Positions 67 to 48,158 of a stretch of 64,000 nucleotides of DNA are shown in pieces (the stretch's first letter is position 1; every line of letters starts with the position of its first letter). Below the pieces are notes generated by a model that saw only the letters and a program-made list of their open reading frames with translations, did no database searches and was not told where the DNA came from. The position numbers were made by a program, and so were the translations under genes. Source of the DNA: Haliotis rufescens (taxonomy: Eukaryota); contig NW_025963791.1 in the NCBI RefSeq assembly GCF_023055435.1, forward strand, positions 17,794,001-17,858,000. Reading direction: 5' to 3'.

Positions 67-2095
67 TTAACTGCCCTATCGATAAATACTACGACGCCGA
101 TGCGAGGCGGTGTGCGAGATGCGATGAATTGTGTCATCAAGCAACAGTCAGAGGTACAGAGAACAAGTGTCGCTGCCTTTGTCCAGGTGAGTCTGTTTTC
201 GAATCACTGCTACATATACACCAACGTTGTCAAAATGTTTTGGCGCTATTTACAAATAACACGGTATCATGGAGTCGTCCACCATTTCGTGTCCAACGTA
301 TAGTAATCAATTTGTTGTTTTCACAAGATATTTATTTTCATGTCATTTACATATATATGAAATATATATTTAATATGTATCAACAAATTTCGTTAGATTC
401 TGATTTGAGACTCCTTTATTCTGCTCAGAGACAAAATACATTCGATTTGTGTTAAGTACCAGAAAACCAGAATTCAACGTTTTTTGTTTTTGTTTTATAT
501 TAAACTAATATAACATACTTGAATATGAGTGTATTAGCTGTTATGTACACATTTGTCCTCAGTTGACAATGCTGTCACAACCACAACGACCGGTACTACT
601 CAAAACGTAACGCGACATGTTGTAGCAGTCAGTCCAAAGAACAACGTTACAAATGCAGGTAAACGTTATAACATCCACATATTGTGTCCAAGATAAATAT
701 TACATGCATAAGAAAAGAATTGTAATTTGGCCAAAACTATACAGAAAATAAATTACTTTGTCGTTGGAGCGGCGCCTCTTTTTTCCACAAAACGTTGCGA
801 TTATACAAAGACATCTATTGGCCACATTAGTTAAAAAGTTACAAAATATTAAAGAAACAGTCTCAACATCGTTTTCTAGAAAAAGATAAAGCGTTTATCA
901 AGGAATATGAGTTTAATATTATCCATACTTTAAAAAGATCGATCGTAATATCTTTCCGATATTTGCACATGTGTATTTCAGCAATTCTCAATGTTGACTG
1001 GTCAGTTGAAGCGATATAACGTCACGTCGCTTCATTGATGGCAATAGCACGATGAGACGTTATCAATGGTTTATAATGACGTCACAAATTGATAACATTT
1101 TACAGTTTTCTTTAGTTTCTTTCTTTACAAACATCCGTCTATAAGTAACTGATAACCTACTCGATGCTCGGGATTATGTAGTGTCTCTGTCTGGTAAATG
1201 AGAGCTGACAATAGGAGCTAACACCATTTATTCCTCGGTGAAGATAATCCCCAGTCCCTTGTACACCTTCGTTATGTGGGTAAAACCTGATTCCTGTTCT
1301 ATTTTCTACAATGATGATTTTCAAATAAATCCAAACAATAGCCTGGTGCCTTTTGCGTACAAATCAGTACGTCTCTGCGCCTGTTTCTGGTTTTGGTAAT
1401 TTTCTGGAAATTCATTTTCATACCTTTCCTGAAGACTAATCACAGTTTTTTGATAGACGTTGATACTTCTGACCAAAATTTCCGACAAATAAAACATCCA
1501 TTTGTCAAAGACGTTTTCTAATAGTATTGTTTTATTTACATCTGATTAGCAGGTGCAGGCACCACAAGTATATGTATATTAGGTGCAATCATCATACTTC
1601 TTTGCACCACCGTGTTGGCTGTTACTGTTTTGTGGGAAATTGGAACCCGTAGATATTATGGAGATTGCTGTGGCTTCAAGGCATCCGAAGGTATCATGTT
1701 TTGTTTAATAAACAACCCTTTAATATACAATCTGAAATGTATACATGCGTGTAAATCACCGAGAGAGTGATGTTCTCATTGGGTATTGAAACCTGAAGAA
1801 AAGAGTAACTTATGTAAGAGTAAATTATGAAATATATAAGCATGCACATACAGGCCAAATGTTTCCTTTTGGTTATAGTTAATTATAAGTAGAATGTTAA
1901 TTTAAATTTTAGTATTGATAATTATAAAAAAAACATAATCGCGTTGTGTACACTGAGTTATAAAAAATAAATATGAACAAGAAATTAATGTGTTGAATTT
2001 CAGTGGTGGAGGTTGAAAGCTCCAATGGACGGGGGAAAGAAGAAACGCTCCGCCTCAACGACCGTGAAAATGAAGATTCGCAGATACCCAACTGA
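67..2095 (+). CDS. Receptor gene 1: TNFR-like (TACI/BCMA/Grindelwald-type CRD) single-pass membrane protein, 5' exon(s) outside window
   Basis: Exons 67-186 (NCPIDKYYDADARRCARCDELCHQATVRGTENKCRCLCP), 563-658 (Thr-rich stalk VDNAVTTTTTGTTQNVT...), 1553-1690 (TM SICILGAIIILLCTTVLAVTVLW), 2004-2095 (tail ...GKEETLRLNDRENEDSQIPN*). All introns GT-AG and phase 1, frame preserved. Confidence 0.8.
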
Positions 2096-3682
2096 CAGTA
2101 AAAGATACCATTCATCATTTAATTCCAATATCGAGAAGAGAGAAATAATGTAGTTATTGTACAAACTGCAAGAATCCAACAACCACACGTAGCTGGCATG
2201 CTAGATGTGAGATTACGTTTGCCTCATTACAGACTTCAAAAGTCATGACCTAAGCAGTACTGATGCATGTCGTGTCCTTATTCTGTTACGACGTACGAGG
2301 GAACTTTCACATGATCTTTGTGTTCTTTTGGAGTATATATTAATTTTACAGCTACAACCTTGTATGACGCATGCGTTCCTTACACACATAAAATAACCTG
2401 ATAATCCTATGTACTTGTACAAGTATAATTACATCTGAGAAATAGCTTTAACGCATCTTAATCTCTTTTATTTCGTCACCTAGCCTTAAATCAGTAAAAT
2501 ACATCAATAACTCGTTCCTGCCATTGAAATCACGATCGAGTCAATCCTCAACATGGTCTCAACAAACTCTCACCACAGACTATATTACCGTGTAACGGAT
2601 CATGTTTATTTGTACCCGAAATTACTACTTGTTATTTATCATATAATGAACATTTACTTTCCAATAGCAACCGCCCCTTGCAATCGGTATAGTCTTTTTT
2701 GTATCATTTAAATGGATGTATAATGTATCGCTCATTTGAACCAAAGGTTCAAGTGAGCTTATGCCATTGCGTTTTGTGTGTCGTTACTCTAAGTTTTACT
2801 TTTTTTTATGGAACACACGTTGTGATTGAATGGTGCAACCGGTGGAGAAGGGCTGGTATACCTTTTTTGCAAACAGCTGATGTCAACACTATTTTGCCTT
2901 TTACACACAGTGGAATCAGTTTCAGCAAATACTCGAACATAGAATCTCAGGCGTTGACGTTTTAACATGTTCATATTCTCTGGAATATTCCTCTTGATTC
3001 AGAGGAATATTCCTCCTGAATGTCATCGTGAAAATTTTCACGACTATTGTTTAGCATAGGCTAAGAAACATAGGTAAAACTAGATTATATGTTGTTTAAG
3101 AAATAACTTAATTTTTTTTACGATCACTACCTCTCGGACAAAACCTTTCAAAACATATGTCACCAACGATTGTTAGTTATATAGTTAAAAGTCTTTATAT
3201 TTGAAAATAAATCTAGATCATTGATACTGTAACAATAACATTTAGTTCATTGCGATAAATGCAATAACTGTTATTGAAATATTTACATCCATACAATTTA
3301 ATGTACACCTACAATTTTGAAATAATTAAATTTTCGTTGTGTTCATTGAAATTCCTGCATTCTGATTAGCTGAATTGGTCACGTGTTATTGCATTCATTC
3401 CCAATGAATGTAAAAAATTAAGCCACCCCCACCGAGGCGCACTACATTTATTACTGCGGAATGTCGGAGAATCCCAATATTACGTGTCAAGTTATGTGCA
3501 TAAATTAAACCAGATTCATGTCACGCCACAGTATGTATTCCTACACCTGGAATGTTTACCAATCTCGTTATTTTTGTCTGTTTTGATATATACAACTGTT
3601 TTTGGTTAAACTTTTGTAGATAAAACATGTTTTACGTTGTCGAATTATATTATAAGCATTGCTTGTGTATTTTTTTCTGTTT

Positions 3683-3781
3683 ATTGAGGTATGAATCGAA
3701 AAACGATGTGCAAAATTTTGTAAGAATCCGCTACGCGGATTCATACAGGTTGCACATCCGATTTTTCATTCATACCTCAAT
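3683..3781. repeat. ~100 bp imperfect palindrome (hairpin), probably the end of a non-autonomous DNA element
   Basis: attgaggtatgaa...gatgtgcaa...gaatccgc-ta-cgcggattc...ttgcacatc...ttcatacctcaat is self-complementary. Confidence 0.55.
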
Positions 3782-6837: not shown

Positions 6838-8090
6838 ATGTCGGAGTGCCCAAAAGACTTTTACTTGGAACCATTGTCTGGGACTTGCAAACCTTGTGAT
6901 GAATTATGCCACCAAGCAACTGTCAGGGGGACAGTCAGACTCTGTCGAAGATTTTGTCCAGGTATTATAAAATATATTAAATAAATTAATCTAGTGACAA
7001 CGACACTCCAAACCTTGTGTTAAAGACTTTTAGACAAATAGTCGGATGCATACATCGTGATTACAGTCGTGTCACTTAAACGATTTCGTCGTGTTTTTTA
7101 GGTGAACATTTGACTTGCTTTTGCGTGTGTTTGTGACGGGTGCTACCCATGGGACAGGATACGACTCTCGGGAGCCTGGTATCATCACTACACGTACTTC
7201 TGATATAGTTGGAATCGTGGAATGGACTCTGATGTTAGCAGATATTCTTTATGATCATGGAAGGGCTTTTGTTGCGTTTAACTCTAAACATGGTATCTTC
7301 TGTGTTGTAGTGGTTGTTAATGCGCCTGTCACGGAGGCACCGATCGCGACTGATCCAGTTACGACAGTTTTCACACCCAGTTACGAGCAATCAACCAACA
7401 GCTTGAGTAGTGGTAAGTTATACTTTTCCAAACACTAAAATATACCTTTTGATCCTACGCTGAAGTGAACAAATAATTATTTTTTTTAAATCTTGGGAAG
7501 AAAGTAAAATTAACGCTTATTTTAAACTGTTAATGTGGATTGACTGTCTTTTGAAAATGATATCCGTCAAGTTATCAAGAATATTTCCAAATTGCGTTGG
7601 ATAGCATTGTTCTCGTCATTATTTCATGCTCATGATAGAGTCGGTATCGGACAACCGACTCTGTTTGGGGCATTCATTTCTTATGAATATGGAAAAGGGG
7701 TTTGTCGCTTTTATTTAATTATTAAAGTATGTGTTAAAAAGTGACAATTCTAAAGTTGATACAGAATCATGTCTGCTATGTGTTACGCATTCCATTGTTA
7801 GTTATACTTGTATCTGATCCATCTTATACTCATTCGTTTTCATCTTTCACCTGTCAGTGACGCACCACTGTCTCCGGCGTTCCATTATTCCTGTGTTCTT
7901 CTTTGCAGATGGTTCACTTGAAGCGCAATATGCCGTCATTATTCTAGCGACTTTAATCATCCTGATTTCCCTGGTACCGTTAGTGGTTCTCCTAAAAAGA
8001 GAAATTATAAACTTCCTGAACAGACGAAATATGGAGACGAAGCGCGAAACCTCGCCGGGAACCCGGTTTAATACCAATCTACAAATCTAG
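6838..8090 (+). CDS. Receptor gene 2: leaderless single-CRD TNFR-like membrane protein
   Basis: Exons 6838-6961 (MSECPKDFYLEPLSGTCKPCDELCHQATVRGTVRLCRRFCP), 7311-7412 (stalk VVVNAPVTEAPIATDPVTTVFTPS...), 7909-8090 (DGSLEAQYAVIILATLIILISLVPLVVLLKRE...TNLQI*). In-frame stop at 6793 upstream of the ATG. Confidence 0.85.
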
Positions 8091-10968: not shown

Positions 10969-13927
10969 ACTGCCAAAGAGATTATTATTACAATGCTGAC
11001 ACCAGAGACTGTCAAAGCTGTGCCCATCTGTGCCACCAGGCTGAGGTACGAGGGACGTTGCAGAAGTGTGGAGACTTATGTCCGGGTAAATGAAAATATA
11101 AGTGTGAAAATATTGTCCTAAACTCTAATATTCGGTCGTTCGTGAGTTAGTGAGTTAGTGAACACTATTTCAGTTATGCCGCGGCGTGTCAGCTCTATGT
11201 TGGCGGAAGCCACATTGTTTAAATCTACTAACACGGGTATGGTGCTGACAAACCTAGGAACATAATCACAGCGGATCAGGATTGACATCCCCAAGAGACG
11301 GAAGTATGGTACAACGATTTGTGGCGCTTATAAATATAGTTTGTATCTTCCAATTTTCTTTAGGTGATGAGGCGACATGTTTTAAAACAATCATAAAGTG
11401 ATATTGATGACATATTCCAGTTCCGGTTACAAACCAGTTCCCACACCGAACTACGGAGAACATGAAGACAACTGTCACGATAAGGATTCCAGATGGTGTA
11501 ACTGTGCACGATGGTAACTATGATGTTTAACGTCTGTAGACAACCAATTAAATCGTATGTTGAAATATGAAAGACAAAATCACATACACATCGGTGTGAT
11601 GACGATAACGGCAAGTTTTGGGGAAGTGGTGTTTGTGTCTTCAGGACGTACTGGCCATACGAAATGGACAATTTGGATAAATATTCTGATTCAGACACAT
11701 TGTGCAAACGATTCTGCATATTTACCTATTAAAGACGCTAAGGCGAACATGACACTGGAGCTGTACAGTAGAAACGTTTGCGAATCGTGCGATGCGTGGA
11801 GGCTATTAACTGAGTCTGTATGGCAAATATCATATATCAAGAATTACAATTTCATCTCATTCATCGCATCGAAGCACGGAACGGATAGGTAGTCACTGTA
11901 TGTGACATATAAAACGGATTGTGATACCACAATTATCTCACCTATGTCAAAACTTTGTTTACCAGGTTCCCCTCATGTTGTTGTCGTGGTCTGTCTGATG
12001 TCAGTTGTCCTGACCTTCCTGGTGGTACTGATGGTAGCTGTTGCCATTGCCTGGGGAAGGAGAAAGAAAAAGCAACAGAGACAAAGAATAACAGTTAACT
12101 ACCGACACAGGGATACAACCGAAGATGGTATACTTTTGATAATTCTCATGTTGAAACAACTATCGTAATGCCATGTCTTATCTTAAATCTCATGTATTTG
12201 GAATTAATTAACAAATTCGGCGTGATTAAATTTCCACACCTAACAATTATCAGATGAATGGTTCTGCTAAATATCCGAAAGGAAGAATTGAAAAGTCTAA
12301 GTGTCCACTTGAACATGTACCTGCAAATAAAAGAGACAAACCCCTCTCAAAAATCATAATAAATCTCTGATAAAAGCAGATTCCAACTTTATCATAAACA
12401 TGTGTTTATGAATAACTATATATAGTGATCATACTAAGCGTTCACGAAAAGGTCACCACCGGTGGCACCCGTCACAAACACATGCAACGGCAAGTCAATT
12501 ACCTGAAAAATCGTGTGAACATATGGCACAATTCAAAACAGGGAACTGCATCGAATCGAGTCGTATGACGCTCTTTGAAATCTTTGTTGTGAAAGGCAGA
12601 AACCCTATAGCTATAGCTGCAGAAATATTGCTCGACATAAAGGGAAAGTTGGAATCATTCCTCTAGTCATACAGTCTTGTGGATGGTCAAATTTTGATAT
12701 TTTGCTTAATGTATACAAGCTCTCCCAAATTAGTTGGAAGTACAAATTATACTCGACAGGTTTGAGATAATTAACATTGTCCAGAAGGAACGTTCGTACC
12801 CCAAATGTAAAGTGATGCTACAGTGATGCAATTCGATTTGGTATGGTGCAGCTCAGTGACATCACATTTGTTAAAAAAACATGATGCTGACATATATAGT
12901 AGACGTACAATGTTTTTGTGAACTTCGTGTGGCAAACGTAATACAATGATGCTGACCAGAGTTACCTCCCCTGAACCAGCATTTGACTGTGATTATTCAT
13001 ATAAAGTGAGTGAGTGAGTTAACAATTAACGTCACAACGTCATGTCGTGACGAGACCAATTTACATATTAAGAAGATATACATTTATAGTTTATAAAACC
13101 TGTAAAACAACTACAGATCCATAAAATTAAATATATAAGAGTCACACAAGACGCGGTGTATAATACACTTTTCTTTATTTCAGACACAGAAGAAGCCTTT
13201 AGAGAAGAGCCAACCTCCAATATCAGCATGTTGTCATGATAATTTATCATCTTCTAACAAGGTGGTGTCTCTTTAACATGGGCATGTATAGTACAATCAT
13301 GATGATTTAATATCATTCAGCAAGTGTTTTAATTACCAAACCTTATCATTCATCATTTTCTGTCAGTGTATGTCCATAAACATCTTTATTCTGAGATATA
13401 CGTCCATCATATAGCAATGTAAATATCGCCATCATTATTCAACTGTTTGAATCAATGTTTTTCAATGTTCTTTTTTAACATTTATAATAAAATGGTAATC
13501 ATGCAAAGTACTTTATGAATGTCATTTAGACTTTTGTGTACAATACTGCAATAAACATTCAACAGCATTTATCATCTATTTATTTTGCTGTGTTCATCTT
13601 CAACATTTATATTAATGTCATATCTTTCAACACATTGCTGGCAATCTTCAAAATGTTACATGTGTACTTCATCATGAAAAAAAACTGCAATTATCAACAA
13701 ATGATCATCATGATAGAAAAAGTTTTTAGATGTGTGTGGAATAATAAATACAAATAAAAGCTTATCAGTTGCAAACATGTGTATGTCATTTATTAACTGT
13801 GCAAACTGTTTTGTGATAGTATTTATGTAAATTTATGAAAATTATATTGTAGTTTCTTGATTTAGGTGAACTTTCGGACAAGTGTGCCTCTGTCAAAACA
13901 CATTGCATGGGCAATGAAAACGTGTGA
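10969..13927 (+). CDS. Receptor gene 3: CRD-stalk-TM-tail, first exon uncertain or disrupted
   Basis: Exons 10969-11085 (DCQRDYYYNADTRDCQSCAHLCHQAEVRGTLQKCGDLCP), 11421-11513 (stalk VPVTNQFPHRTTENMKTTVT...), 11966-12127 (TM VVVVVCLMSVVLTFLVVLMVAVAIAW then RRKKK), probable last exon 13866-13927 (GELSDKCASVKTHCMGNENV*). Start unresolved: ATG 10857 read-through, a mini exon ATGAAAG|gt at 9689-9695, or a decayed exon 1. Confidence 0.7.
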
Positions 13928-14870: not shown

Positions 14871-14945
14871 TTTATGATACCACTTTACGTCTGTCACGTG
14901 GGTACTACTACAAACTAAGCATCTTCTCAGTTCGATTCACACGCA

Positions 14946-16589
14946 ATGTACGTCAAATACGTCGAATTGGAACTTTGGCCGTCCTTGCTCACCTGGGTAT
15001 CGGAAAGCAGACCAAGCTGCAAACCCGAAGAGTACTTCGACATTGCAACACATGCTTGTCAGCCGTGTTCATGTCAATGCGTTAGTGAAACCGATTTGTC
15101 ATGCCCTGTGTGGATCAACGAAGGCACATGGAGCTCACACAATGAATTTCATCACTCACAAGATTGGAATCATTATTGCTGTTCAGACCAGTCATATTTG
15201 ATATATATAGAATACCATAATACATTTTCGTGCTAATGGGCTGATTGTTGATGTTTAGGGGCGGTTGTGTTTTTATAAACGTTGTAATTATGACATGTTT
15301 GCTATTTTTTTCTGAAATTGAAAGTGTTTTGTGATACATATTGTACTGCAGCCTGCCAGACAGACTTCTACTACGACGTGGCGTGGGAGATTGAGTTGTG
15401 CGAGTCTGTACCAACAGGCTGAGGGCAACAAATACTGTCTTTGTTTGTGGTTTAACGCCGCACTCAGGAATATTCCAGTTATATGACGGTGGTCTGTAAA
15501 CAATCAGTGATTGACATCATGAGCATCACATCACGCAATTGGGATACGATGATATGCCATCAACCAACTCACCGAATCTGACCCCCATCAGTTTTATCAC
15601 CTCTTACGACAATAATAAGTTGAGGTTTATATTCTCACATGGAATTCAAAAGTGGAGTTTCATTTTGTGTAACAAGATGCTTTTACAATTAAATAAACTA
15701 ACCAATCATTCATTCATATTGTTTGCAGTTGGAACGTCAGAGAGGACTGAACCAAGACGTAGTACACCAGTCCTTACCACGTCAAATCAAGCATTGACCT
15801 CACAGAGAATGAGAAAAGGTAAAGCTTCCCAATTCCATTGCATATTATGAGCCATTCGTTTGCATTCATTGCCCTCCAGTAGATACTGATTCAGACTGGA
15901 ATTCAAATAAGAACAGATCACATAATTAATTAGCTTCCATGCTTGGTAATGTAAAAATTGTAAAAGAAATTGAATAATATGATATATTTCATAAATAACC
16001 GTTTTATATAAATGAGCTGGCAACATCAACAATGTATCCATACATATCGTGATATTGAAATGAAAATGAAGATTTTTAAATGATTGAAATGCATCATCTA
16101 AAGCCATCTTCTGATATACACTCATACAGGTCTATATAAACATTGTATGGTCGTTTTGTGTGTGCAGATAGACATAAGTCAAGCATAGCAGTGGTCATAG
16201 CTGGGGTAGACGTCTTGGTTATCTCAGTGTGTGGCATTATTGCGTTTGTAAAGAAGCAATTGAAGCAACAGTGGCACCGTGTTATATATACAATTGCTGC
16301 TTCTGTAGATACAGGTGGGCAATCCAGAAATTTAAGGGCATTGGTTATTACCTATAGCCAAGAAAATTGTTTATATTTGATGTTTTCGTGTGTCGCATCA
16401 GTCATTTTACAAAAGTTAGAAATAAGTACTCAAATTAAGACACGGTTAAGATACTGTGTTTGTGTTTGTCTCATTAAATTCATTACATAATCTACATTTC
16501 ATATTTACATTTTGATGCAAAATCACACATTGCCGGTTTATGATCATTATTATGATTTTTATTATTATCATTATTATTAGTAGTAGTGT

Positions 16590-16646
<57 letters not shown>

Positions 16647-24562: not shown

Positions 24563-24564
24563 TC

Positions 24565-25017: not shown

Positions 25018-25023
25018 AACATC

Positions 25024-32273: not shown

Positions 32274-33497
32274 TATGTGTAGCCGTTATGTGTGGTTCTA
32301 TCCATAACAGATTATGCCTGGACATATTTTATCTTTGTAGTAGAATTTAAATGTTATTATCATTACATATACATGTACCGAAACAGGGTTGTTCACCCGG
32401 TTGGAGTGGCTCTTACTTTTAGTTACTCATTGTTGGTAATATCCGTTTTGTTTATGAAACAAGAGGCTAGGTGAATGGAAAACGTATACTAAATACTCTA
32501 ACCCGTTCGAGGATTTATTAAATTTAATTTGAAAAAACAACAACACACAGGAACCACAATACACGTCGACATGTAAAGATCTGAAGCGTTAAGTTGAGAC
32601 AGTTATTTTCACGCACTGTTGGCACTGTTGTGATGGAAATCGAAATAGATGCATTATGTTGCACATGTAGGCCCCAAAAGGAGTGTAATACGTACCCTCA
32701 CCCCCACCCCCACCCCACAACAGAAAAAAACTACTACTACATGTAGTTGTGACACAGGAAATTAAATCTACCCGACAGTTCGACAACACTGGCCGTGTAG
32801 ACTAACAAGACTTTGAGTGATTTTGTGGCGAGTTGCGGGCATTATTGCATAATTCGTTTGCAGACACCGCGTATGTATATGGAAACTGCCATTGTACCTG
32901 CTGTAATTGATGGGGTGGTTCACGTGATAACATACGGCACTATCAGTGGTGATGGACGGCGCCTTTGAACTCGCCTCCGACGATGATAACATAACAGCCA
33001 TAATGTGTTTTTACCAAACTGGATATGACAATTCAATATTTTTAATATGGAGCTAAATGTACATATGCGTTGAGAGACATGTTATTATTAAACTGGTGGT
33101 AAAAGGAGACATAACGACTTTATTGCGTAGCTACTGACTGATTCATTTAAGCATGTTTTATTGTCAAGAAACACTGAATTATATACACTACAAGAGATAG
33201 TACACTGTAGAAACATGCACAGCCAGGTACTTATTTAAACAGACTTAGTATTATGTTAAAATACCTATAGGTGCAACAATAATATGACATGTTTCTTCTG
33301 AAGAATTGGAAAATTATATATTTCTTTAAGTCTATATTATATCATAATGTTCATGAATTAATATTAACATGCTTAATTCATCAAGTGGGTCTATTTTACC
33401 AAATATAATTGTTGTGAAATCAAATTTTCACCAAAATTCGTAATGAGAATATTTTTGCATGATGCAGATCGTATTGTTGTACCAAGAGAAGGAAGTG

Positions 33498-34996
33498 ATG
33501 GGAATTTGCTCAAAAGATTTTTACTGGGAAGCAGTCTCTGGCACCTGTCAGCCTTGTGATGAACTCTGCCACCAAGCCGATGTCAGGGGGACAGGCGCAC
33601 GCTGTAGAAAACTGTGTCCAGGTACCATGGAATTCATATAATTAAAACTGATGAAAAATCTAATACGAGATGTGCAAGAAATATGACACAATATAAAGTA
33701 TTAGGAGACTCGTCCAAACATTTCAGTTTGATACATTGACAACTGAAATAGATGTATTCACCTGTATTTAACATCCTTTCAGATCTTGCTGTGAATATAC
33801 TGTTTCATGTTATAAGTGGTAAACTATCGCTTTTAAAAGTATGATCTAAAATTATAAAAGCTCGGGACTTGTATGAAATTGATATATTGCATGTCTATAA
33901 CATTACTGTGTTTCAGTGTCGCTGCCGGAGCCTGTGACAGCTTTATTGAATGCTCCAACTGCAACAACGTCTGCAACTCTACTATCAGACGATACCTCAA
34001 GTAGTGAACGATGTGAGGTTCCAAGTATCTAGTGCATAATAGGGCATTATATACAAATTTTTATACCAAAAGTAGTTGGTGTATTGTCTCGATCAAACGC
34101 ACAGAATACTAGCAGTACATGTGGTATGATATGTAAAGAATGTAGTATTTCTTTAATACCTTATGAACAATCTGCAAAAGATGCACGTCACGTTATGAAT
34201 ATCCAAACCATGTTAAACTATTACCTCATACCATTTATTGTTGTCATAAAATATCTAACCCCGTGGGGATTCCGGGTTAGAATTGATCCCCAGAAACCTA
34301 TGCTGGGCTGGCTAATTGACTTAGTTCATCGCATGCCATTGACCCCGTTGCTCATAACATCAATCACTGCATTGTCTGGTCCAGACTCCATTATTTATAA
34401 CCCGCCGCCATATAGCTGGAATAATGATTGCTGCAGAGTTGAGCAACAAACAATTAAGTGTCTCGATTTAGTTTGTGCACATGCAATTTGTTTGAGTAAT
34501 TGAAGGCAACAAAGTTGAACAAAACGAAAATCTGTCATGATGAAGTCATTTGGACTCACCATACTATAATTGTAATAACCGAGCCATGCTTTTGAAATTC
34601 TGGGGCAACTTAAACAATCAATGGAGATCTATTTGACAGATTTGTGCTCGGAACTGCCTGTTAAATAAAATGAGCGCCTTCTTACCAATGGTTATTTGCA
34701 CCAGTTTATGTTTTTTGACAAAAGAAAGCTTGATTTGAACCTTACTAAGGATTACGTTAGATTGATCTTATGTGTTATAATAAATATTTAGCTGAATAAA
34801 CAAATAAGGGTTTTTTTCAGATGGGTATGGGGCGGCAGAATATGCTGTCGTTATACTGGCTGTGAGCATCCTCCTGATTTCTCTGGTGTCCTCGGCAGTT
34901 TTGTTCAGAAGAGAAATATATTTGATCTTTTACAGGCTAAAAGTAAAGTACTGTCAACGTTGTAAACCCAGTTCAAATCTGAGAAGACAAGTATAA
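33498..34996 (+). CDS. Receptor gene 6: leaderless single-CRD TNFR-like membrane protein
   Basis: Exons 33498-33621 (MGICSKDFYWEAVSGTCQPCDELCHQADVRGTGARCRKLCP), 33917-34012 (stalk VSLPEPVTALLNAPTATTSAT...), 34821-34996 (YGYGAAEYAVVILAVSILLISLVSSAVLFRRE...SNLRRQV*). TM exon clearly homologous to gene 2. Confidence 0.85.
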
Positions 34997-36237: not shown

Positions 36238-38346
36238 ATGTCCGACTCAGTCGAAACAGATGTTTGGAGGGTGTTGGTTAAACCTCATACGAACATAGTA
36301 CGATTCCTTTTGGCATCTGTGTTACTATGTCTAGTAGCAGGGAAGCCGATATGTGAAGGGGGGACATACTATGACATCGTTACCGACAATTGTGACCCTT
36401 GTAGTCATATATGTGACTATTCCGAGGCACAGAAGACAACAACAGAATGCGAAACTAAGTGTCCAGGTAAGATTAACGCTAGCTCTGCTTCACATGACCC
36501 TTGTTTATTCGCATCGCGTTGTGATGTAATAGCCAGTACGTTACATGGTTGCAGTCGTAAAACGCGTACAGTACACTAACTGTAACTTGATTTTATTGTC
36601 CCTTTTCATAAATACTTATCACACGTTTGACATTAAGAAAAGGAGAATGCAGAGCCTGTGCCATTTTATTTGCAAACGTATATATGCATTTCATTTGTTG
36701 TGTGTCCAGGTGGGTTTAGAATTTGCTTCATTGAGACCAGGGAGAGTGATTTTAAAAATCTATTTTCCTTCTAGAATATGGTAAGAGAGGATCTCTCCAT
36801 CAACCAGGGAGCGTGATAATGAAAATCTATTTTCCGTCTAGAATATGGTAAGAGAGTATATCTCCATCAACCAGGGAGCATGATTATGAAAATCTATTTT
36901 CCTTCTAGAATATGGTAAGAGAGGATCTCTCCATCAACCAGGGAGCGTGATTATGAAAATCTATTTTCCTTCTAGAATATGGTAAGAGAGGATCTCTCCA
37001 TCAACAGAAATGCCCCTATCTACAATATTATGACGACGTTGTGTCCCGATGTGACTCCTGTGAGAGCATCTGCCTCCATGCTGGACCACAGGATCCGGGC
37101 CATCAAGAAACATGTCGACGTCTCTGCCCTGGTCAGTTTTTTCTCCTTTCCAGATACTCGATCATTTAAAGGTGTATTAATATCATTTCCTTTAATCTTT
37201 GGTGGATATCCCTATAGTTACAGAGATAATACATGATATTGTTAAAATGTGTAAGGAATGTTGTTGTTTTGTTACAGAATGGCCTGGTTATAGCATTACA
37301 ACTGTGTCTCCACAAGATTCCACCATGAAAAATCCTCAGAATAAATCACTCGCCAAAGACAATCTGCCTTATACATGTCCGTGTATTGTTCAATTTTGTA
37401 TTTCTTTAATCATTTTCCCCCACATAAATGTATACAATGGTTGTAACCTCATCAATGCAATATAAACATGAATATTTTTTAAAGGCAACACTAATTTCAG
37501 ATAACATAATTACTGCATTTGTGAAAAATTGCATTCAGTTACTTATGTTACAAAAATTAACGTATGATCCTGCTTGTTTTGTCATGACTGAAGCTATTGT
37601 ACACAAACATACATTTTCGATGTTTTTTCATACAGTGGGCAGCAACGTTATCATCATACTGGCGACGTGTGTCATAGCGGTTGCTGTTGTTGGCCTTCTG
37701 TGTGTGGGCGTGATAAGGAGGAAGAAGTCTTTCTGTCAGCGACAGCATCATCCAAAACCAACACCAGGTATTTGTCACCTTCTGTCACCAACACCAACTT
37801 TCACCAATACCCACACAAATATGAATCCCCAACGTCCCTTAATAAATGACATAACTACCAAGATCCCCTTCATTCAACCATCTGTAAGTTCATCCCTCAT
37901 CCACGACATACGTCCACCCTTACGATTACAACATGTCACCAACATCTCCGGCCCATTACCCACACGCTGCCACTGCCACTGCCACATCAGGTCGGACCAT
38001 ATGACAAATTGCGGGTGTTTCCACAGATAAATATTGCTCACGTTATATATACGGGAACCCTTATGTCATGTGATTCGCTAATACAAATCAGCTTTAGTTA
38101 ATTATTTTCAGTTGTTTTATTACATTTTAATAATAAAAAAACATAAAAAGATGGTTTTCTGTATATTCCAGGTATTGACGCGGATAACACAATCTGTATA
38201 AACTAAGACCCAAAACAGATTTATCAGATTTGATTTTCGTGAATGTATGCTTCATACTCAATTTTGTCTGCTCCTCAGAACTCTTGACTGGCGAAGGAAA
38301 CCCTCTCACTCAGCCCGAGGATGACAAACAGTTTCAAGGAAGATAG
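36238..38346 (+). CDS. Receptor gene 7: long leader/signal + two CRDs + stalk + TM + tail
   Basis: Exons 36238-36466 (MSDSVET...FLLASVLLCLVAGKPICEGGTYYDIVTDNCDPCSHICDYSEAQKTTTECETKCP), 36976-37131 (EYGKRGSLHQQKCPYLQYYDDVVSRCDSCESICLHAGPQDPGHQETCRRLCP), 37278-~37376 (stalk EWPGYSITTVSPQDST; donor uncertain), 37636-37767 (TM VIIILATCVIAVAVVGLLCVGVI RRKK), 38279-38346 (ELLTGEGNPLTQPEDDKQFQGR*). Confidence 0.8.
36737..37004 (+). repeat. 4 x 67-bp tandem repeat spanning the intron1/exon2 boundary of gene 7
   Basis: Unit ccagggagcgtgattatgaaaatctattttccttctagaatatggtaagagaggatctctccatcaa starts at 36737, 36804, 36871 and 36938. Confidence 0.92.
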
Positions 38347-41900: not shown

Positions 41901-44900
41901 TTTGTTGAAGCTAAAAACGATGTGTTAATTTTGAATTAAATCTGCGGCGAACAAGTGCAGAGATTCTGCTGCTTACAAGCAAAGAGGAACTCTTGTTCAA
42001 CACGTTTTGGAGGTCGAAGGGCATTTACGCAGATAACTGTTACAAGAACAACCATTCTGTTCATAACTACTGCCACACATATCCTGTTCAACACGAGCNN
42101 NNNNNNNNNNNNNNNNNNNNNNNNNNNNNNNNNNNNNNNNNNNNNNNNNNNNNNNNNNNNNNNNNNNNNNNNNNNNNNNNNNNNNNNNNNNNNNNNNNNN
42201 NNNNNNNNNNNNNNNNNNNNNNNNNNNNNNNNNNNNNGAGTCGATTATTTACCTGCTGCCATGATATAGACGGACTGTTGATGGCGTCAAACAACAAACG
42301 GACATCAGACAAAATTACAATAATCAGTATTAATGGTTCATTGGATAATATAATGCTTTTAAAAAACCCTATACACACCAGTAAAACCTGAACAACACTT
42401 CAGAACTATCATCATGGTATCATTGCTATTTGATTGTGATTAAAAAACAAAGGCACATGATATTCTCGGAATCGTCCAATCGACTCTGCTTTTAGCGGAG
42501 ATTTCTTATGAATATAGAAATGGTTTCGTAGCTATAAATGTTCATATTTACGTGCCCCTGAACACCACGATCTCATCATTTCATTTGTTTTTCTGTGAGT
42601 ATATATTTTATGCCCGATGGAATCTGTATTGGTGGATAATCAAGTCTGGCGTTGACGTTTTCAAAGTTTGAGTAAAACACGGTACGTAATCAATGCATTT
42701 CGACCATCACTACACGACTAAAACATATCCATCGATTATATGACGTATTGATGAATGCAGGGTCATGACACGGAATCATTTGGTTTGTGCGTGGCCAGTC
42801 AGTCGGAAACGAGGGCAGTCGGGATTTTACAGGAGAAATGGCGACCTGTCCGAGGGACTTCTATATGGATGGAAAATCTGGAAAGTGTCAGTCTTGTGCT
42901 GAGCTGTGCCATCAAGCCGAAGTTAGGGGAACTGTCGAACTTTGCACCAACCTTTGTCCAGGTGCTGTCAATCCACTCATTAAATCCCCAAATAGAAATG
43001 TAACAAAATAACAAACATTCACTTTGTTTATATATATGATGTTTGCAGCTGGAAAGCATGAAACCTAAGCATAGCATGTACATACATGTATAGGTACTTA
43101 AGATATACAAACTCACCGTGTTCATGGAAGCGTCTTATAGGAGTTCTTATAGGAATCTCAAAAGTTGATAACCCTTATCATGGTCAATGTGAACCAAACA
43201 AATGATGCTATAAGCTTTCCTCTTGCTCTTCCTTTTCATAGTCGCTCTTATTAAGTAAATTAATTCCAAAGACATAATTTATTGTATTTGGTATGCAACA
43301 TGTATGGAAATTGTTTCAGTAAAAGGCCATTGTAAATGCCACTTCCTGTGAAATATATGTTCATGGCAGTCTGTTTATGATAGTGTCTTCAGATAACTCT
43401 GTTCCGGAGGCTTACATTGACACGGCTACAACCACCAGTGCAACTGAGGCAGCAGTTATTGCACCGATCGATGGTGAGTGTTATAATGTGACAGAATATT
43501 TCTTCAGTACAGGGTTACTAATTCCAATGAGGAATCATCATGCTTTGAGTATATCTTCACTGATATACATGCATGTACATTCAACGAACCTTTTGAATCA
43601 TTCTTTTTTGTCTCGCTGTTCTAGATGAGAACCTGATACCAGAGGGGGTGGTCATCACACTGGCAGTGGTCATCATCCTAGTGTCCCTGGCGGCCTTGGT
43701 CATCCTACTGTTCTGTGAAAGAATTGAAAAACACGCAAGCCATCGGAGAGGGCTGGATGAGGACGTGGAACCGTCGGTTACCCTGAATAGCGTCCCTGTG
43801 AATCTGCATTGAATTTCACAATATGTGCACAAGAAACCTCGAATCGGCTATTTTGGGCAGCATCTCATCAGCTGTTGCTTGATAAAGATAGCTGTAGGTG
43901 AATGAATATATCAATACTTGGTATTAGTTGAATGTTATTATGTTAGGGTTTTATTTCATCAATTTAATTGATCCTTGTCTATTCAGCAACTACAAAACCA
44001 AAGTTGGATCCATACGTATCCCTGAATTCTGTAGTATAGAATTGAATGGTGACTGTAGTCTACAAACCGATGTTAAATTTGATGGGAAGTGGTTTGTTAT
44101 TGAACTATTATAAGTGTCATTTTGTACCAATAATGCCTTTGTAACCATTATGTGCTTTGCCATAATACATTATGAATTTAGTTTTTAGTTTGAAATAATT
44201 AGACAGTAAGGAATATACATAAGTGAGTGAATAAAAGTGCACGCCTGAACAAGTTTAAAATATATTTATTATGGACATAAACATTGAAACGGAAACAGCA
44301 CAGATTTGAACATTTTTTTGTCACATGCACCAGCTAATTACATATTAAAACATTTCTCACATTATTAGGGAATCAAAGTTTCAAGGGAATACACATTTTC
44401 TAAGATGTGTTTAAGATTTTAGGAAACGTCGTAAATCCACGTATAATTAAGGCTAATGGAATGGAATTAAAATTAAAAAATGCATTCATTATATCGTACA
44501 GTTATTTGTTGATTTCATTCAACTATATATAGCTGCTTAAAATCGAAAAAGAATGGTTATTTTCTGTTCAATATGGCCAGTGTTGATAAACTCAGGAAGG
44601 CGTAATTGNNNNNNNNNNNNNNNNNNNNNNNNNNNNNNNNNNNNNNNNNNNNNNNNNNNNNNNNNNNNNNNNNNNNNNNNNNNNNNNNNNNNNNNNNNNN
44701 NNNNNNNNNNNNNNNNNNNNNNNNNNNNNNNNNNNNNNNNNTTATACCTAAATTTATATATATATATATACATGTGTGTGTGTGTATAGATATATATATA
44801 AAANNNNNNNNNNNNNNNNNNNNNNNNNNNNNNNNNNNNNNNNNNNNNNNNNNNNNNNNNNNNNNNNNNNNNNNNNNNNNNNNNNNNNNNNNNNNNNNNN

Positions 44901-45441: not shown

Positions 45442-45943
45442 ATGTCCGAGTCAACCGAAACCATTGTTCAGAGGGTATCGGTTAGACTTGATATGAATTG
45501 TCTATTTCGAATCCTTGTGACGAGTGTGTTATTATATCAAGTCAGCGGTAGGCCCGTGTGTAAAGAAGGGATGTATTATGACAGCGTCACCAACAACTGC
45601 GATCCCTGTAGTGACATATGTGAATATTCTGAGGCACAAAAAACCACAGTGGAATGCAGAACAAAGTGTCCAGGTAAAGTCAATATTGTAATATATGCAA
45701 TTCATCACATATTTCTGTAAAACAGGAAATGTGAAAAGAAATAAATATTTTCGTCCCTTTCGCTTCTATGTGTGCATCGACTGAAATATTTTCAAAATCC
45801 GGGTGTAGAATATAATTATCAATGCAAGCACAGCAATAAAAAGTGTAGGTTTCCGGCATCCAGATACCTTCAGCAACCTTCAAATTTCTTGGTAATTTCC
45901 AGATAATTTTTTCATGTGTTTCACACTTAAGTGAACAAAATGC

Positions 45944-45977
<34 letters not shown>

Positions 45978-48158
45978 ATGCCGGAAACCTACACTTTTTT
46001 TGCTGTGAAGACAATAACCAGCAAAGACTATCCGACCAAACAGACAGGAATATGTACAAGCTGGTATCCGGATATAAGCAGTTATTTCATTGCAATGTTA
46101 GATTTACATGTTAATGCACGAAAGTTACATGACACTTTGGGACGGGATTGGCCCAATATCAAAGCCAACCAAAATCAGTGGGTGATTACAAAACACCATG
46201 GTCTTATTGGTGCAATTTACATGTACCTTATTCATTTCAGTAACAGTGAAATAGTTTGTATATCGTCATATGCCAGAAACCATCCAAAAATATCGACCAA
46301 TGTGATGCTATGTTAATAATATCAGCCAGTGAAAAAGCAAGATTGGGTGTAAATTTATTCTCTGCGAACATGTTTGTGTAAAGTGTTGATACAGATTTGT
46401 TTCGATTGGGAGAAGATCAAGATCATGGGTAGTTTTTATGCTACACCCTGTTGAAAATAAAAGTGTTTTGTATTTGAAATGCATTAATTACCATAATCAT
46501 GCGATATCAAGAACTAAAGCGTCTTCATGAGTATACATCATAATGAGTGGATAGGACTATCTGTACTTAGATTGATACATAATGAATAAAAACGACAAAA
46601 CCCTTTCTATATTCATAAGAAACTTCTGCCAAAAACATCAATACGAGTCCGACAATATCATGAGCATGTGTTTATGAATCACTATCAAAAAGTGATACCA
46701 GTTGCTCGCGAAAAGGTGAGCGTACACAAGGTATATACATGGTATTAATTTTTTTGTTATATGACTTCTTACGGCATCTCGTCTATAGGAACAGGTAAAA
46801 GACATTTCAAACCACGTTAGACATGTACTCTAACAATATATATATACATGTAGGATATTTACATTTCTTTCTCTTCTATAGGTTATGGTAGCAGAGGAAG
46901 CCGAGGTCTGCAAAGAGAAAGTATGTGTCCGCCTCAACAATATTATGATGAAAATGTAAACCGATGTGACTCCTGCGATTCTGTCTGTGTCAATGCAGAA
47001 GGAGAAGTCTGTCGACGTTTATGTCCGGGTAAGTATAATTTAAAACTTGAAGATATTCATTTGTTATCTGCTTTATATCCTGGAAAAGTGTGCAGATGTG
47101 TAAATTTATATATTTATTATAACACTGGGCCTTTGTTTCTTAATAATTATGCACAGGTATTGATGACGGATAATTCATTTACAAACTGAAACGTATGTGT
47201 TTATATAAATGATAAAGTATGCTTGTGTTGTTTTTTTAACAGAATGGCCTGGTATTACCCAAACAACAACATATGGTCAAGATGAATCCACCAAGATGAA
47301 TCTCCATGCTTTATCACTGGCAAATGGTATTCTACCTTGTCGTGAAAAACGACTTAAATGTATATTCATAATATGCTGGATAGAAGAGCATATATGATTT
47401 GTCTATGTACTGGGTACAGAAGTACACCATAAATGTCAGAGACACATATGCCTGTCATCATTAACGCTTTAAGCAAAGACTCTGTGTCACAGATGTACAT
47501 GTGTAATAGATGTAACTATTGTGAATAACAACAATACGTATATCAGTTGGAATAACGGTACCTGTTCCTGTGTTGCAGTGGTCGTCACCTACACGCCCGC
47601 ACCTGTGATTGTACTGGCATGCATTGTAGTAGTAACTGCTGCAGCTGGCTTTTGTGTTTTGATAATTCATCTAACAAGGAGGAAGATGTGTTTCTGGCAG
47701 CCTCAGCAGGCTAAACCAGGTGGGGATGCACATCAATTTAATACACAGATTAACAACCTTGCACTATTACTGAACATTCATGAAATCAATGTACACTATG
47801 TAATTATTAATACACACTAATGCATCCGCAGGGAGGTGTAGTGTATATATCGCATGTCCAATCACCATACATTTAATAGTACAGGTCATAAAGCTTGTTA
47901 ACCCTTAACTATATTGAATGTCAGACTAACCTCATCCAGTAAACAAGCAAAACAAGACACACGGAAACACATTACTTAGAATCAAACACTAACTGATACA
48001 ATAGGCATTAAATTGATACTTAATCCTTTGTCTGCTCCTCAGATCATCTGACTGGCGAAGGGAACCCTCTCACCCAGCCCGAGGATGACCGTCATTGTGA
48101 AAACAACGCAACACAATGCCATGCTGCAGTTATTTCTCAACCAAGCAACGAAATGTAG
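45442..48158 (+). CDS. Receptor gene 9: leader/signal + two CRDs + stalk + TM + tail (closest paralog of gene 7)
   Basis: Exons 45442-45673 (MSESTET...MNCLFRILVTSVLLYQVSGRPVCKEGMYYDSVTNNCDPCSDICEYSEAQKTTVECRTKCP), 46882-47028 (GYGSRGSRGLQRESMCPPQQYYDENVNRCDSCDSVCVNAEGEVCRRLCP), 47243-~47326 (EWPGITQTTTYGQDEST...), 47579-47719 (TM VIVLACIVVVTAAAGFCVLII), 48043-48158 (DHLTGEGNPLTQPEDD...QPSNEM*). Confidence 0.85.

What the first reader, a model, noticed from the sequence alone, without database searches (positions are those of the whole stretch)
67..48158. Tandem array of ~9 diversified TACI/BCMA/Grindelwald-like, death-domain-less TNF-receptor-type genes in an invertebrate
Seen: 13 copies of one 6-Cys exon module ending CP|G-gt, 11 intact and 2 degenerate (67, 6838, 10969, ~15018, 15352, ~21176, 21733, 33498, ~36350, 36976, 42838, ~45558, 46882). 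Each gene continues with S/T-rich stalk, TM and short tail exons, all on + strand. Established: the spacing C-x4-Y-[WF]-D-x5-C-x2-C-x3-C-xn-C-x3-C is that of the compact CRDs of TACI (TNFRSF13B) and BCMA (TNFRSF17), and is related to Fn14 and Drosophila Grindelwald. Those receptors are single-copy genes in vertebrates and flies. Inference: this is a lineage-specific expanded, fast-diverging receptor family (immune, allorecognition or TNF-ligand decoy repertoire). Automated annotation is likely to miss it because most exons are under 65 codons.
Basis: partly seen in the sequence, partly recalled or inferred. Interest (0 to 1): 0.92.

Follow-up and report, generated by a model that had tools for sequence, protein, structure and literature searches.

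The report
Abalone array of BCMA/TACI-like receptors
This stretch of the red abalone genome holds nine tandem genes (part of a roughly 30-gene, 350-kb cluster) for tiny membrane receptors whose cysteine-rich domain is a real relative of the vertebrate B-cell receptors TACI and BCMA. This shows that this receptor type is ancient and has multiplied greatly in a mollusc.

Summary
Eleven intact and two degenerate 6-Cys exons lie on the + strand, all ending CP|G-gt; 100 shuffles gave none. They form nine genes (eight look intact, gene 4 looks dead), each with stalk, TM and short-tail exons, and every intron is in phase 1. RNA contigs from four studies show the GT..AG junctions of genes 6 and 7.

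The window is Haliotis rufescens. RefSeq already annotates these genes as "uncharacterized protein", so annotation did not miss them.

Homology to TACI/BCMA is supported:
- A profile of the window's own CRDs retrieves vertebrate TACI at E 5e-5 among 1.8 billion proteins.
- HHalign against TACI gives 95% probability.
- The top 12 PDB sequence hits are all TACI or BCMA.
- AlphaFold models superpose on BCMA and Grindelwald over the whole domain.
- The single-CRD genes lack a signal peptide, as BCMA, TACI and BAFF-R do.

The array is larger than reported: 37 CRD exons in the genome, 35 of them within 350 kb. It is also old. Synonymous sites are saturated and CRD omega is 0.08-0.35, so it is not fast-diverging. 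The family occurs in molluscs, an annelid and a nemertean. The genome also carries at least 82 TNF-ligand exon matches.

Ligand binding remains an inference. A preprint already reports "grnd homologs" in spiralians, so this is a new, very large member set of a known kind. No N gap touches a coding exon.

The parts
67..2095 (+). Gene 1 (RefSeq LOC124152024; its 3' part lies in the window). Exons: 67-186 (CRD, type A-like), 563-658 (S/T stalk), 1550-1690 (TM), 2004-2095 (tail and stop). The first exons lie upstream of the window.
   Evidence: P0001/P0028 map at 100% to these exons. The upstream exons are at C13:17778503, 17780179-17780301 and 17788914-17789066.
6838..8090 (+). Gene 2, type A. 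It has a single CRD, starts M-S-E-C and has no signal peptide. Exons: 6838-6961, 7311-7412, 7909-8090. The protein is 135 aa.
   Evidence: P0022 maps at 100%. The AF2 model gives CRD pLDDT about 95. The top Foldseek hits are BCMA and Grindelwald.
10969..12171 (+). Gene 3, type A. Exons: 10969-11085 (CRD), 11421-11513 (stalk), 11966-12171 (TM and tail). The start codon is uncertain: the M-K-A-C start of its closest relative in the database (P0035, source unnamed) is not in frame here.
   Evidence: Phase 1-1 exon search plus similarity to P0035 (81% in the CRD).
14940..16487 (+). Gene 4, a probable pseudogene of type B. Degenerate CRD1 at 15018 (cysteine spacing changed, no phase-1 GT donor). 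Degenerate CRD2 at 15352 (CxxC lost, stop after 22 codons). TM-like open frame at 16140-16487.
   Evidence: The only Pfam hit is BCMA-Tall_bind, E 1.5e-4, below the cut-off. No RNA test was done.
21098..23116 (+). Gene 5, type B (signal peptide plus two CRDs). Exons: 21098-21290 (signal peptide and CRD1), 21733-21876 (CRD2), 22174-22278 (stalk), 22468-22653 (TM), 23061-23116 (tail).
   Evidence: The closest H. asinina protein, P0004, maps at 71-79%. Exon boundaries come from the phase 1-1 search.
30600..34996 (+). Gene 6, type A. A non-coding 5' exon ends at 30666. Other exons: 33467-33621 (ATG at 33498, M-G-I-C, CRD), 33917-34012 (stalk), 34821-34996 (TM, tail and stop).
   Evidence: RNA contig joints 33621|33917 and 34012|34821 are GT..AG in 2-3 runs. 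A loose end at 33467 matches 30638-30666.
36238..38346 (+). Gene 7 (LOC124152020), type B. Exons: 36238-36466 (signal peptide and CRD1), 36976-37131 (CRD2), 37278-37376 (stalk, skipped in isoform X2), 37636-37767 (TM), 38279-38346 (tail). Poly(A) signal at 38402.
   Evidence: P0002 maps at 100%. RNA joints 37131|37278, 37376|37636 and 37767|38279 are seen in up to 4 runs. AATAAA found.
42838..43812 (+). Gene 8, type A. It starts M-A-T-C. Exons: 42838-42961, 43384-43473, 43625-43812. The protein is 133 aa.
   Evidence: P0021 maps at 100%.
45442..48158 (+). Gene 9 (LOC124152019), type B. Exons: 45442-45673 (signal peptide and CRD1), 46882-47028 (CRD2), 47243-47326 (stalk), 47579-47719 (TM), 48043-48158 (tail and stop). 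The protein is 239 aa.
   Evidence: P0005 maps at 100%. The AF2 model gives CRD pLDDT 83-93. VIA-align: Grindelwald Z 4.9, BCMA Z 4.2.

Best explanation
The window holds nine tandem paralogues (eight apparently intact, one decayed). They belong to a roughly 350-kb, roughly 30-gene cluster in Haliotis rufescens that encodes very small single-pass membrane proteins of the TNF-receptor superfamily. Their ectodomain is one or two compact CRDs of the TACI/BCMA/Fn14/Grindelwald class.

There are two architectures:
- Type A (genes 2, 3, 6, 8 and the in-window CRD of gene 1): one CRD starting 1-3 residues after the initiator Met, with no signal peptide. This is a type III topology, as in BCMA, TACI and BAFF-R. 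An S/T-rich stalk, a TM and a tail of about 30 aa follow.
- Type B (genes 4, 5, 7, 9): a signal peptide fused to CRD1, then a CRD2 exon, stalk, TM and a tail of 45-60 aa.

Shown here: the sequence, the exon structure, the splicing, the homology and the fold.

Inferred mechanism: the beta-hairpin carrying the conserved aromatic-aromatic-Asp motif docks on trimeric TNF-family ligands, of which this genome has at least 82 THD exon matches. The highly variable residues just after the Asp would set which ligand each paralogue binds. The short tails have no death domain. They would signal through adaptors (TRAF-type or other), or the proteins would act as non-signalling modulators. The duplications are old and the CRDs are under purifying selection. 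The array is therefore a maintained repertoire, not a rapidly evolving one.
For: - Sequence pattern: 11 versus 0 in shuffles.
- GT..AG joints in RNA contigs.
- A profile of the 11 window CRDs against 1.84e9 proteins gave 114 hits. These include bichir TNFRSF13B (2e-4) and two TACI proteins recognised by their sequence (5e-5 and 4.7e-4).
- Pfam on those hits: BCMA-Tall_bind in 17, TACI-CRD2 in 11, TNFR_c6 in 7, BaffR in 3, Fn14 in 2.
- A profile of 35 genome CRDs against PDB: the top 12 are all TACI (0.0026) or BCMA.
- HHalign against a TACI alignment: 95.2%, E 2.6e-8.
- AF2 gives CRD pLDDT 83-95, with a beta-hairpin followed by helices.
- VIA-align: Grindelwald Z 4.9 (44 of 51 residues), BCMA Z 4.2 (rmsd 2.0 A over 38 of 39). 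Foldseek's top 11 hits for type A are BCMA or Grindelwald.
- Type A proteins start M-x-x-C, and gene 6 has a non-coding upstream exon. BCMA, TACI and BAFF-R are type III receptors without a signal peptide (PMC5360319).
- Y7 and D9 are conserved in 31 of 35 CRDs, and the tip residues are the most variable.
- 82 PF00229 matches in the genome.
Against: - No window CRD reaches Pfam's gathering score; the best is 22.2 bits against a cut-off of 27.
- Fold Z-scores are low in absolute terms, as expected for 39-residue domains.
- The Leu of the vertebrate DxL motif is usually Val or another residue.
- No canonical TRAF motif was found in the tails examined for genes 1, 2, 7, 8 and 9; the tails of genes 3, 4 and 6 were not scanned; A-Q-E-E occurs in the gene 5 tail and in that of its H. 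asinina relative.
- No ligand binding has been shown.
- The cognate ligands are unknown.
Confidence: 0.72

Rival explanations
1. The proteins are true TACI/BCMA-class CRD proteins, but they act mainly as non-signalling decoys or ligand buffers, membrane-bound or shed. They would tune the large TNF ligand set and would not transduce a signal.
For: Tails are only about 30-60 aa. In the tails examined (genes 1, 2, 7, 8, 9) no canonical TRAF2 or TRAF6 motif was found. Type A tails are poorly conserved between paralogues (40% identity between genes 2 and 8). Stalk-skipping isoforms exist (P0002 versus the RNA).
Against: Genes 7 and 9 keep a shared tail motif (L-T-G-E-G-N-P-L-T-Q-P-E-D-D), although synonymous sites in their CRD and TM exons are near saturation (dS 1.0-1.7; 0.47 in the 22-codon tail exon). 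This argues for a constrained cytoplasmic function. BCMA and BAFF-R also signal from short tails (my own knowledge).
Confidence: 0.15
2. The CRD scaffold has been co-opted to bind something other than TNF-family ligands, for example microbial surfaces, self/non-self markers or extracellular matrix. The array would then be a recognition repertoire unrelated to cytokine signalling.
For: The hairpin-tip residues differ strongly between paralogues. The copy number is large. No ligand has been shown. The single complex prediction gave no answer, which is not evidence either way.
Against: The aromatic-aromatic-Asp motif that TACI and BCMA carry at the ligand-binding hairpin is conserved in 31 of 35 CRDs. 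The genome has a matching large expansion of TNF ligands. CRDs are under purifying selection, not diversifying selection.
Confidence: 0.09
3. The resemblance to TNFR CRDs is convergent. The module would be an unrelated small disulfide-rich fold, or the copies would be repeats of one large EGF-like or furin-like multi-exon gene.
For: Short Cys-rich domains give inflated similarity scores. Pfam hits are all below the cut-off. LDL-receptor class A repeats appear among the weak Foldseek rows.
Against: Each CRD or CRD pair is followed by its own TM exon and stop codon, and RNA and RefSeq models end there. HHalign to TACI gives 95%. PDB sequence hits are exclusively TACI or BCMA down to E 0.15. LDL-A rows have rmsd above 10 A and TM-scores of 0.25 or less, against 1.7-2.9 A over nearly the whole domain for most BCMA and Grindelwald chains.
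Confidence: 0.03

Closest known systems
BCMA (TNFRSF17)
   Same: Both have a single compact 6-Cys CRD at the extreme N terminus and no signal peptide (type III), then a short stalk, one TM and a short tail without a death domain. Both carry an aromatic-aromatic-Asp hairpin. The cysteine pattern C-x12-C-x2-C-x3-C-...-C-x3-C is shared. The best structural superposition is rmsd 1.7-2.0 A over 35-38 of 35-39 residues.
   Different: The loop between Cys4 and Cys5 is 11 residues here; in the printed alignments it is 7 in TACI CRD1, 6 in TACI CRD2 and 8 in BCMA. The Leu of DxL is usually replaced. The proteins are shorter (133-135 aa). There are about 30 tandem paralogues instead of one gene. Sequence similarity is below Pfam's gathering score. 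The ligand is unknown.
TACI (TNFRSF13B)
   Same: Both have two tandem CRDs of the same class, one per exon here. TACI is the best sequence relative: profile E 5e-5 to 5e-4 library-wide, HHalign 95%. The long isoform of gene 1 has two CRDs and no signal peptide, like TACI.
   Different: Type B genes have a cleavable-looking signal peptide. The tails are much shorter than TACI's. No CAML- or TRAF-binding region is recognisable.
Drosophila Grindelwald (and the 'grnd homologs' of bioRxiv 10.1101/2024.07.27.603686)
   Same: Grindelwald gives the highest structural Z (4.9, 44 of 51 residues). The C-terminal half has the spacing Cys-x3-Cys-x11-Cys-x3-Cys, exactly the C2-module consensus given for Grnd (PMC8024323). 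Both are invertebrate receptors without a death domain and with one small CRD. The preprint reports grnd-like paralogue expansion in Capitella (12 copies) and members in molluscs. A Capitella protein is among my hits.
   Different: Grnd has 8 cysteines, with a two-disulfide X2 hairpin and no D-x-L type motif. The abalone CRD has 6 cysteines, with a one-disulfide hairpin carrying the TACI/BCMA-type aromatic-aromatic-Asp motif. Grnd is not detected by sequence with the abalone profile. Grnd has a long tail with Traf2- and Veli-binding regions.
Fn14 (TNFRSF12A)
   Same: Both have a single small CRD and a short TRAF-type tail architecture. There are weak Pfam stn_TNFRSF12A hits for 2 family members and weak Foldseek rows.
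   Different: Fn14 has a signal peptide and different cysteine spacing. Similarity is weaker than to TACI or BCMA.

Membership tests
TNFR superfamily, TACI/BCMA/BAFF-R small-CRD class | Six-Cys CRD: an N-terminal hairpin closed by one disulfide (C-x12-C), then C-x2-C-x3-C...C-x3-C | tested here: met
   The spacing is present in 11 window CRDs and 24 more in the genome. Only the Cys4-Cys5 loop is longer (11 residues). Disulfide connectivity was not checked.
TNFR superfamily, TACI/BCMA/BAFF-R small-CRD class | Score above Pfam's gathering threshold for PF09305 (TACI-CRD2), PF09257 (BCMA-Tall_bind) or PF00020 (TNFR_c6) | tested here: not met
   The best hit is 22.2 bits against a cut-off of 27, and that is on degenerate gene 4. 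Of the 11 CRDs, 5 hit PF09305 (best E 0.007) and 3 hit PF09257 (best E 0.004), all below cut-off.
TNFR superfamily, TACI/BCMA/BAFF-R small-CRD class | Statistically supported homology by profile methods | tested here: met
   The window-only profile retrieves TACI at E 5e-5 to 5e-4 in 1.84e9 proteins. HHalign gives 95.2%, E 2.6e-8. The top 12 PDB hits are all TACI or BCMA.
TNFR superfamily, TACI/BCMA/BAFF-R small-CRD class | Fold: a beta-hairpin followed by a helix-loop-helix, superposable on solved CRDs | tested here: met
   AF2 pLDDT is 83-95. BCMA: Z 4.2, rmsd 2.0 A over 38 of 39 residues. TACI: Z 2.7. Absolute Z is low because the domain is tiny.
TNFR superfamily, TACI/BCMA/BAFF-R small-CRD class | D-x-L ligand-binding motif at the hairpin tip | tested here: inconclusive
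   Asp is present in 31 of 35 CRDs and the preceding aromatic pair is conserved. The Leu position is mostly Val, Asp, Ala or Gly.
TNFR superfamily, TACI/BCMA/BAFF-R small-CRD class | Type III topology (no signal peptide, N terminus outside) | tested here: met
   This is met by sequence for type A genes and the long isoform of gene 1: they start M-x-x-C and gene 6 has a non-coding upstream exon. Type B genes have a signal-peptide-like N terminus instead. Topology itself has not been shown experimentally.
TNFR superfamily, TACI/BCMA/BAFF-R small-CRD class | Binds a trimeric TNF-family ligand (BAFF/APRIL in vertebrates) | not testable with these tools
   One complex prediction (conserved THD x3 plus the gene 2 CRD) returned 'no answer'. 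At least 82 candidate THD exon matches exist.
TNFR superfamily, TACI/BCMA/BAFF-R small-CRD class | TRAF-binding motif in the cytoplasmic tail | tested here: inconclusive
   Regex motifs are absent from the tails examined for genes 1, 2, 7, 8 and 9 (genes 3, 4 and 6 were not scanned). A-Q-E-E is present in the gene 5 tail and in that of its H. asinina relative. Motifs occur in 38 of 101 family tails, which may be chance.
Grindelwald family | Eight-Cys CRD: an X2 hairpin with two disulfides plus a C2 module | tested here: not met
   Only six cysteines are present, and the hairpin has one disulfide-forming pair. The C-terminal spacing x3/x11/x3 does equal Grnd's C2 consensus.

The most novel reading that the evidence does not exclude
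Under this reading, TACI/BCMA-type type III receptors are not a vertebrate invention for B cells. They would be an ancient bilaterian receptor class, and abalone would keep its largest known radiation: about 30 genes and 37 CRD exons. That radiation would be matched with a co-expanded set of at least 80 TNF-ligand exons to form a many-to-many cytokine/receptor code. Every exon is phase 1-1, and transcripts run across neighbouring genes (RNA contigs are continuous from gene 6 into gene 7, and a RefSeq isoform splices over a nested paralogue). Inter-genic splicing could therefore add combinatorial multi-CRD receptors.
Probability: 0.25. Interest if true: 0.78.

Novelty: new member of a known kind. 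Interest (0 to 1): 0.55.

Why it matters
BCMA, TACI and BAFF-R are usually discussed as vertebrate regulators of B cells. Here a profile built only from abalone exons finds TACI. The abalone proteins also share the missing signal peptide, the hairpin motif and the fold. This makes a pre-vertebrate origin of the class directly testable.

Domain-based surveys of invertebrate TNFRs probably undercount these genes, because none reaches a Pfam threshold. A 350-kb cluster of about 30 such genes, beside at least 82 TNF-ligand exon matches, would make abalone an unusually rich system for studying how TNF ligand-receptor specificity diversifies. It also provides candidate immune genes for a farmed and endangered group.

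The finding is not a new kind of system. The genes are already in RefSeq as uncharacterized proteins, and a preprint has described Grindelwald-like receptors in molluscs and annelids.

Tried and rejected
- Complex prediction with the most conserved abalone THD exon (x3) and the gene 2 CRD returned 'no answer' (score 0.01; the alignments were not used; the partner folded poorly). This is no evidence either way.
- pdb_via_wide on the type A model was swamped by coiled-coil matches to the long TM helix and says nothing about the CRD.
- Foldseek E-values never reached significance for either model. I used only the rank order and the domain coverage.
- Self-BLASTN found no recent DNA-level duplication between the genes. 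A recent segmental duplication origin is therefore rejected.
- NG86 dS was undefined or above 1.5 for most paralogue pairs, so positive selection cannot be tested from the paralogues.
- TRAF-motif regexes gave nothing convincing.
- A words search of the scan's notes for TACI/BCMA found nothing.
- The idea of one large multi-CRD gene is rejected, because each unit has its own TM exon, stop codon and RNA or RefSeq support.
- I did not send any joined (spliced) typed model to a search tool. Exons were searched by reference, and the full-length proteins used were database proteins returned by the tools.
- N gaps were left untouched.

Full report
**Observation.** The window has 37.6% G+C and four N runs. 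A pattern for the six-cysteine module finds 11 stop-free copies on the + strand, none on the - strand, and none in 100 shuffles. Two further degenerate copies sit at 15018 and 15352. In all 11 intact copies the Gly codon of C-P-G is GGT. The exon therefore ends on the G and the intron opens with GT, in phase 1 (for the copy at 42847-42963). Self-BLASTN shows no DNA-level similarity between the units apart from one 239-bp match at 74% between genes 7 and 9. These are old copies, not a recent segmental duplication.

**Organism and annotation.** A profile of the 11 CRDs (A1) was run against 1.84 billion representative proteins and gave 114 hits at E <= 1e-3. The best hits are RefSeq proteins of Haliotis rufescens: LOC124152024, LOC124152020 and LOC124152019, all named 'uncharacterized protein'. 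Close relatives occur in H. cracherodii, H. asinina and H. rubra. Five of these proteins map onto window exons at 100% identity. Their contig length, 45,695,856, equals that of the window's contig C13. The window is therefore red abalone, and automated annotation did not miss these genes.

**Gene models.** The exact mapping of the RefSeq proteins, a phase-aware exon search and RNA give nine genes; coordinates are in the parts list. All coding introns are in phase 1 and all internal exons are multiples of three.

Type A (genes 2, 3, 6, 8 and the CRD of gene 1 that lies in the window):
- They have one CRD.
- The open frame begins M-x-x-C. For gene 6, RNA shows that the upstream exon (ending at 30666) has no in-frame ATG, so it is 5'UTR.
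- Related Haliotis proteins likewise begin 1-12 residues before the first cysteine.
- These proteins of 133-135 aa therefore have no signal peptide.
- BCMA, TACI and BAFF-R are described as type III receptors with no signal sequence (PMC5360319).

Type B (genes 4, 5, 7, 9):
- They have a hydrophobic N-terminal segment fused to CRD1, then a separate CRD2 exon, stalk, TM and tail exons.
- Gene 4 has lost the cysteine pattern, the donor site and the frame, and is probably a pseudogene.

**RNA.** Contigs of four runs (four studies, two species labels) were laid on 33100-38900.
- They carry GT..AG joints exactly at the modelled boundaries. Gene 6: 33621|33917 and 34012|34821. Gene 7: 37131|37278, 37376|37636 and 37767|38279.
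- A contig ends at 38401, next to an AATAAA at 38402.
- The runs are contigs. They show presence and junctions, not expression level or strand.
The RNA contradicts that condition for the two genes tested.

**N gaps.** All four gaps lie outside coding exons and outside introns bounded by coding exons. They fall after gene 7, 601 nt before the gene 8 ATG, and between genes 8 and 9. No reading frame is carried across a gap. The gaps may hide a 5'UTR exon, true distances or a further copy. I did not fill them.

**What the module is.**
- Pfam gives only sub-threshold hits: BCMA-Tall_bind at E 1.5e-4 and 22.2 bits against a cut-off of 27, and TACI-CRD2 or BCMA-Tall_bind for most of the 11 CRDs (5 and 3 members).
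- The reverse direction is stronger. The window-only profile retrieves the reedfish/bichir 'tumor necrosis factor receptor superfamily member 13B' at E 2e-4. It also retrieves two proteins whose two CRDs read as TACI, at 5e-5 and 4.7e-4, library-wide.
- Among the 114 hits, Pfam recognises BCMA-Tall_bind in 17, TACI-CRD2 in 11 (best 4e-30), TNFR_c6 in 7, BaffR in 3 and Fn14 in 2.
- A profile of 35 CRDs from the whole genome (A4) against all PDB sequences lists TACI (E 0.0026) and then eleven BCMA entries before anything else.
- HHalign of A4 against a vertebrate TACI alignment gives 95.2% probability and E 2.6e-8 over 27 columns.
- AlphaFold2 models of gene 9 (P0005) and gene 2 (P0022) give CRD pLDDT of 83-95, with a beta-hairpin followed by short helices.
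- Foldseek's highest-probability rows are BCMA, Grindelwald, Fn14 and TACI.
- VIA-align for the gene 9 model gives Grindelwald Z 4.9 (rmsd 2.9 A, 44 of 51 residues), BCMA Z 4.2 (2.0 A, 38 of 39) and TACI Z 2.7. For the gene 2 model it gives Grindelwald Z 3.0 and BCMA Z 2.5. These Z values are low in absolute terms, but the alignments cover almost the whole of these tiny domains.
- The N-terminal half looks like TACI/BCMA: a one-disulfide hairpin with aromatic-aromatic-Asp. The C-terminal half has the spacing Cys-x3-Cys-x11-Cys-x3-Cys, identical to the C2 consensus reported for Grindelwald (PMC8024323).
- I conclude that this is a genuine member of the small-CRD branch of the TNFR superfamily. 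By sequence it is closest to TACI/BCMA.

**Extent and age.**
- In the abalone genome the profile finds 37 CRD exons. Of these, 35 lie in C13:17,777,418-18,126,666, with a + strand block that includes the window followed by a - strand block.
- I fetched the 26 outside copies. Twenty-four are intact and two are degenerate. Allowing for two-CRD genes, this is about 30 genes.
- A tree of the 35 CRDs groups type A (support 96/88) and the CRD2s of type B (90/81) apart from the CRD1s. The two-CRD architecture therefore predates the gene duplications.
- Paralogue dS is saturated (above 1.5 or undefined). CRD omega is 0.08-0.35, and stalk, TM and signal regions diverge more. 'Fast-diverging' is not supported.
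- Named hits outside Haliotis come from gastropods (Gigantopelta, Babylonia, Nucella), bivalves (Mercenaria, Potamilus, Mactra), the annelid Capitella and the nemertean Lineus.

**Function (inferred).**
- Column statistics over 35 CRDs show invariant cysteines (Cys1 is present in all 34 rows that reach it) and conserved Tyr7, Asp9, Thr32, Pro and Gly. The highest variability is in the three residues after the Asp. This is the position of the x-L of the D-x-L motif, which the Grindelwald paper describes as the main ligand contact of TACI, BCMA and BAFF-R.
- The genome has at least 82 matches to the TNF domain (PF00229), in several tandem clusters.
- The likeliest mechanism is binding of TNF-family trimers through the hairpin, with paralogue-specific tips.
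- Tails are 30-60 aa with no death domain. No convincing TRAF motif was found in the tails examined. Genes 7 and 9 keep a shared acidic Pro-rich motif. Signalling, decoy and modulator roles all remain open.
- One complex prediction gave no answer.

**Literature.** A bioRxiv preprint (10.1101/2024.07.27.603686) mined 148 invertebrate proteomes and reports 115 'grnd homologs'. These include members in oyster and scallop and a maximum of 12 paralogues, in Capitella. It mentions Haliotis only for a TNF ligand. Earlier surveys count molluscan TNFRs by TNFR domains (PMC4979521). I found no paper in the searched library that describes a TACI/BCMA-like array in abalone. The finding is therefore a very large new member set of a known kind, with a sharper link to TACI/BCMA than has been published. 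It is not a new kind of system.

**Limits.**
- Joined spliced models were not sent to any search tool.
- Full-length proteins used for folding were database proteins identical to the window's exons.
- Expression level, tissue, strand, topology, disulfide connectivity and ligand are untested.

Noticed in passing
window 34821-36784: RNA contigs of three runs are continuous from the last exon of gene 6, across the whole intergenic space, into exon 1 and intron 1 of gene 7. Four AATAAA/ATTAAA signals lie in between (35340-35622). This could be read-through transcription, a very long 3'UTR, or an upstream start of gene 7.
   Followed up: partly
window 36736-37005: A tandem repeat of about 67 bp lies just before the CRD2 exon of gene 7. 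One run lacks 201 bp (36754->36956, not GT..AG), which looks like a copy-number variant. Another run joins the CRD1 donor to an alternative acceptor at 36775 inside the repeat.
   Followed up: partly
G000:C13:17778503-17794186 (upstream of the window): The long RefSeq isoforms of LOC124152024 start 15.5 kb upstream of the window. They use a CRD exon at 17780179-17780301, then splice to window position 67. This skips a complete type B paralogue whose CRD exons are at 17782584 and 17783366. An alternative first exon lies at 17788914-17789066.
   Followed up: partly
genome-wide: C605 (~10.0-10.24 and 13.8-13.97 Mb), C168 (3.5-4.96 and 6.7-6.96 Mb), C556 (36.25-36.58 Mb), C568, C580: There are at least 82 exon matches to the TNF ligand domain (PF00229), arranged in several tandem clusters. 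One of them (C580:623360-623767) is 60-80% identical to proteins of other gastropods and bivalves. The others look like lineage-specific expansions.
   Followed up: partly
window 34264-34457: A short stretch inside the gene 6 intron has an enormous summed contig depth (3,000-82,000) and many loose ends in all four RNA runs. It is a very high-copy, transcribed repeat, possibly SINE-like.
   Followed up: no
window 18145-19194 and 19579-20616: Two direct repeats of 1,051 bp, 97.7% identical and 385 bp apart, lie between genes 4 and 5. They may be LTRs or a recent local duplication.
   Followed up: no
window 25018-25914: A 299-codon open frame rich in Cys/His lies inside the stretch that another note calls a Merlin transposon (23691-27843). 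Tandem repeats follow at 26843-27703.
   Followed up: no
window 55844-56358: A tandem repeat array with copies offset by about 88 bp and 75-87% identity, outside the gene family.
   Followed up: no
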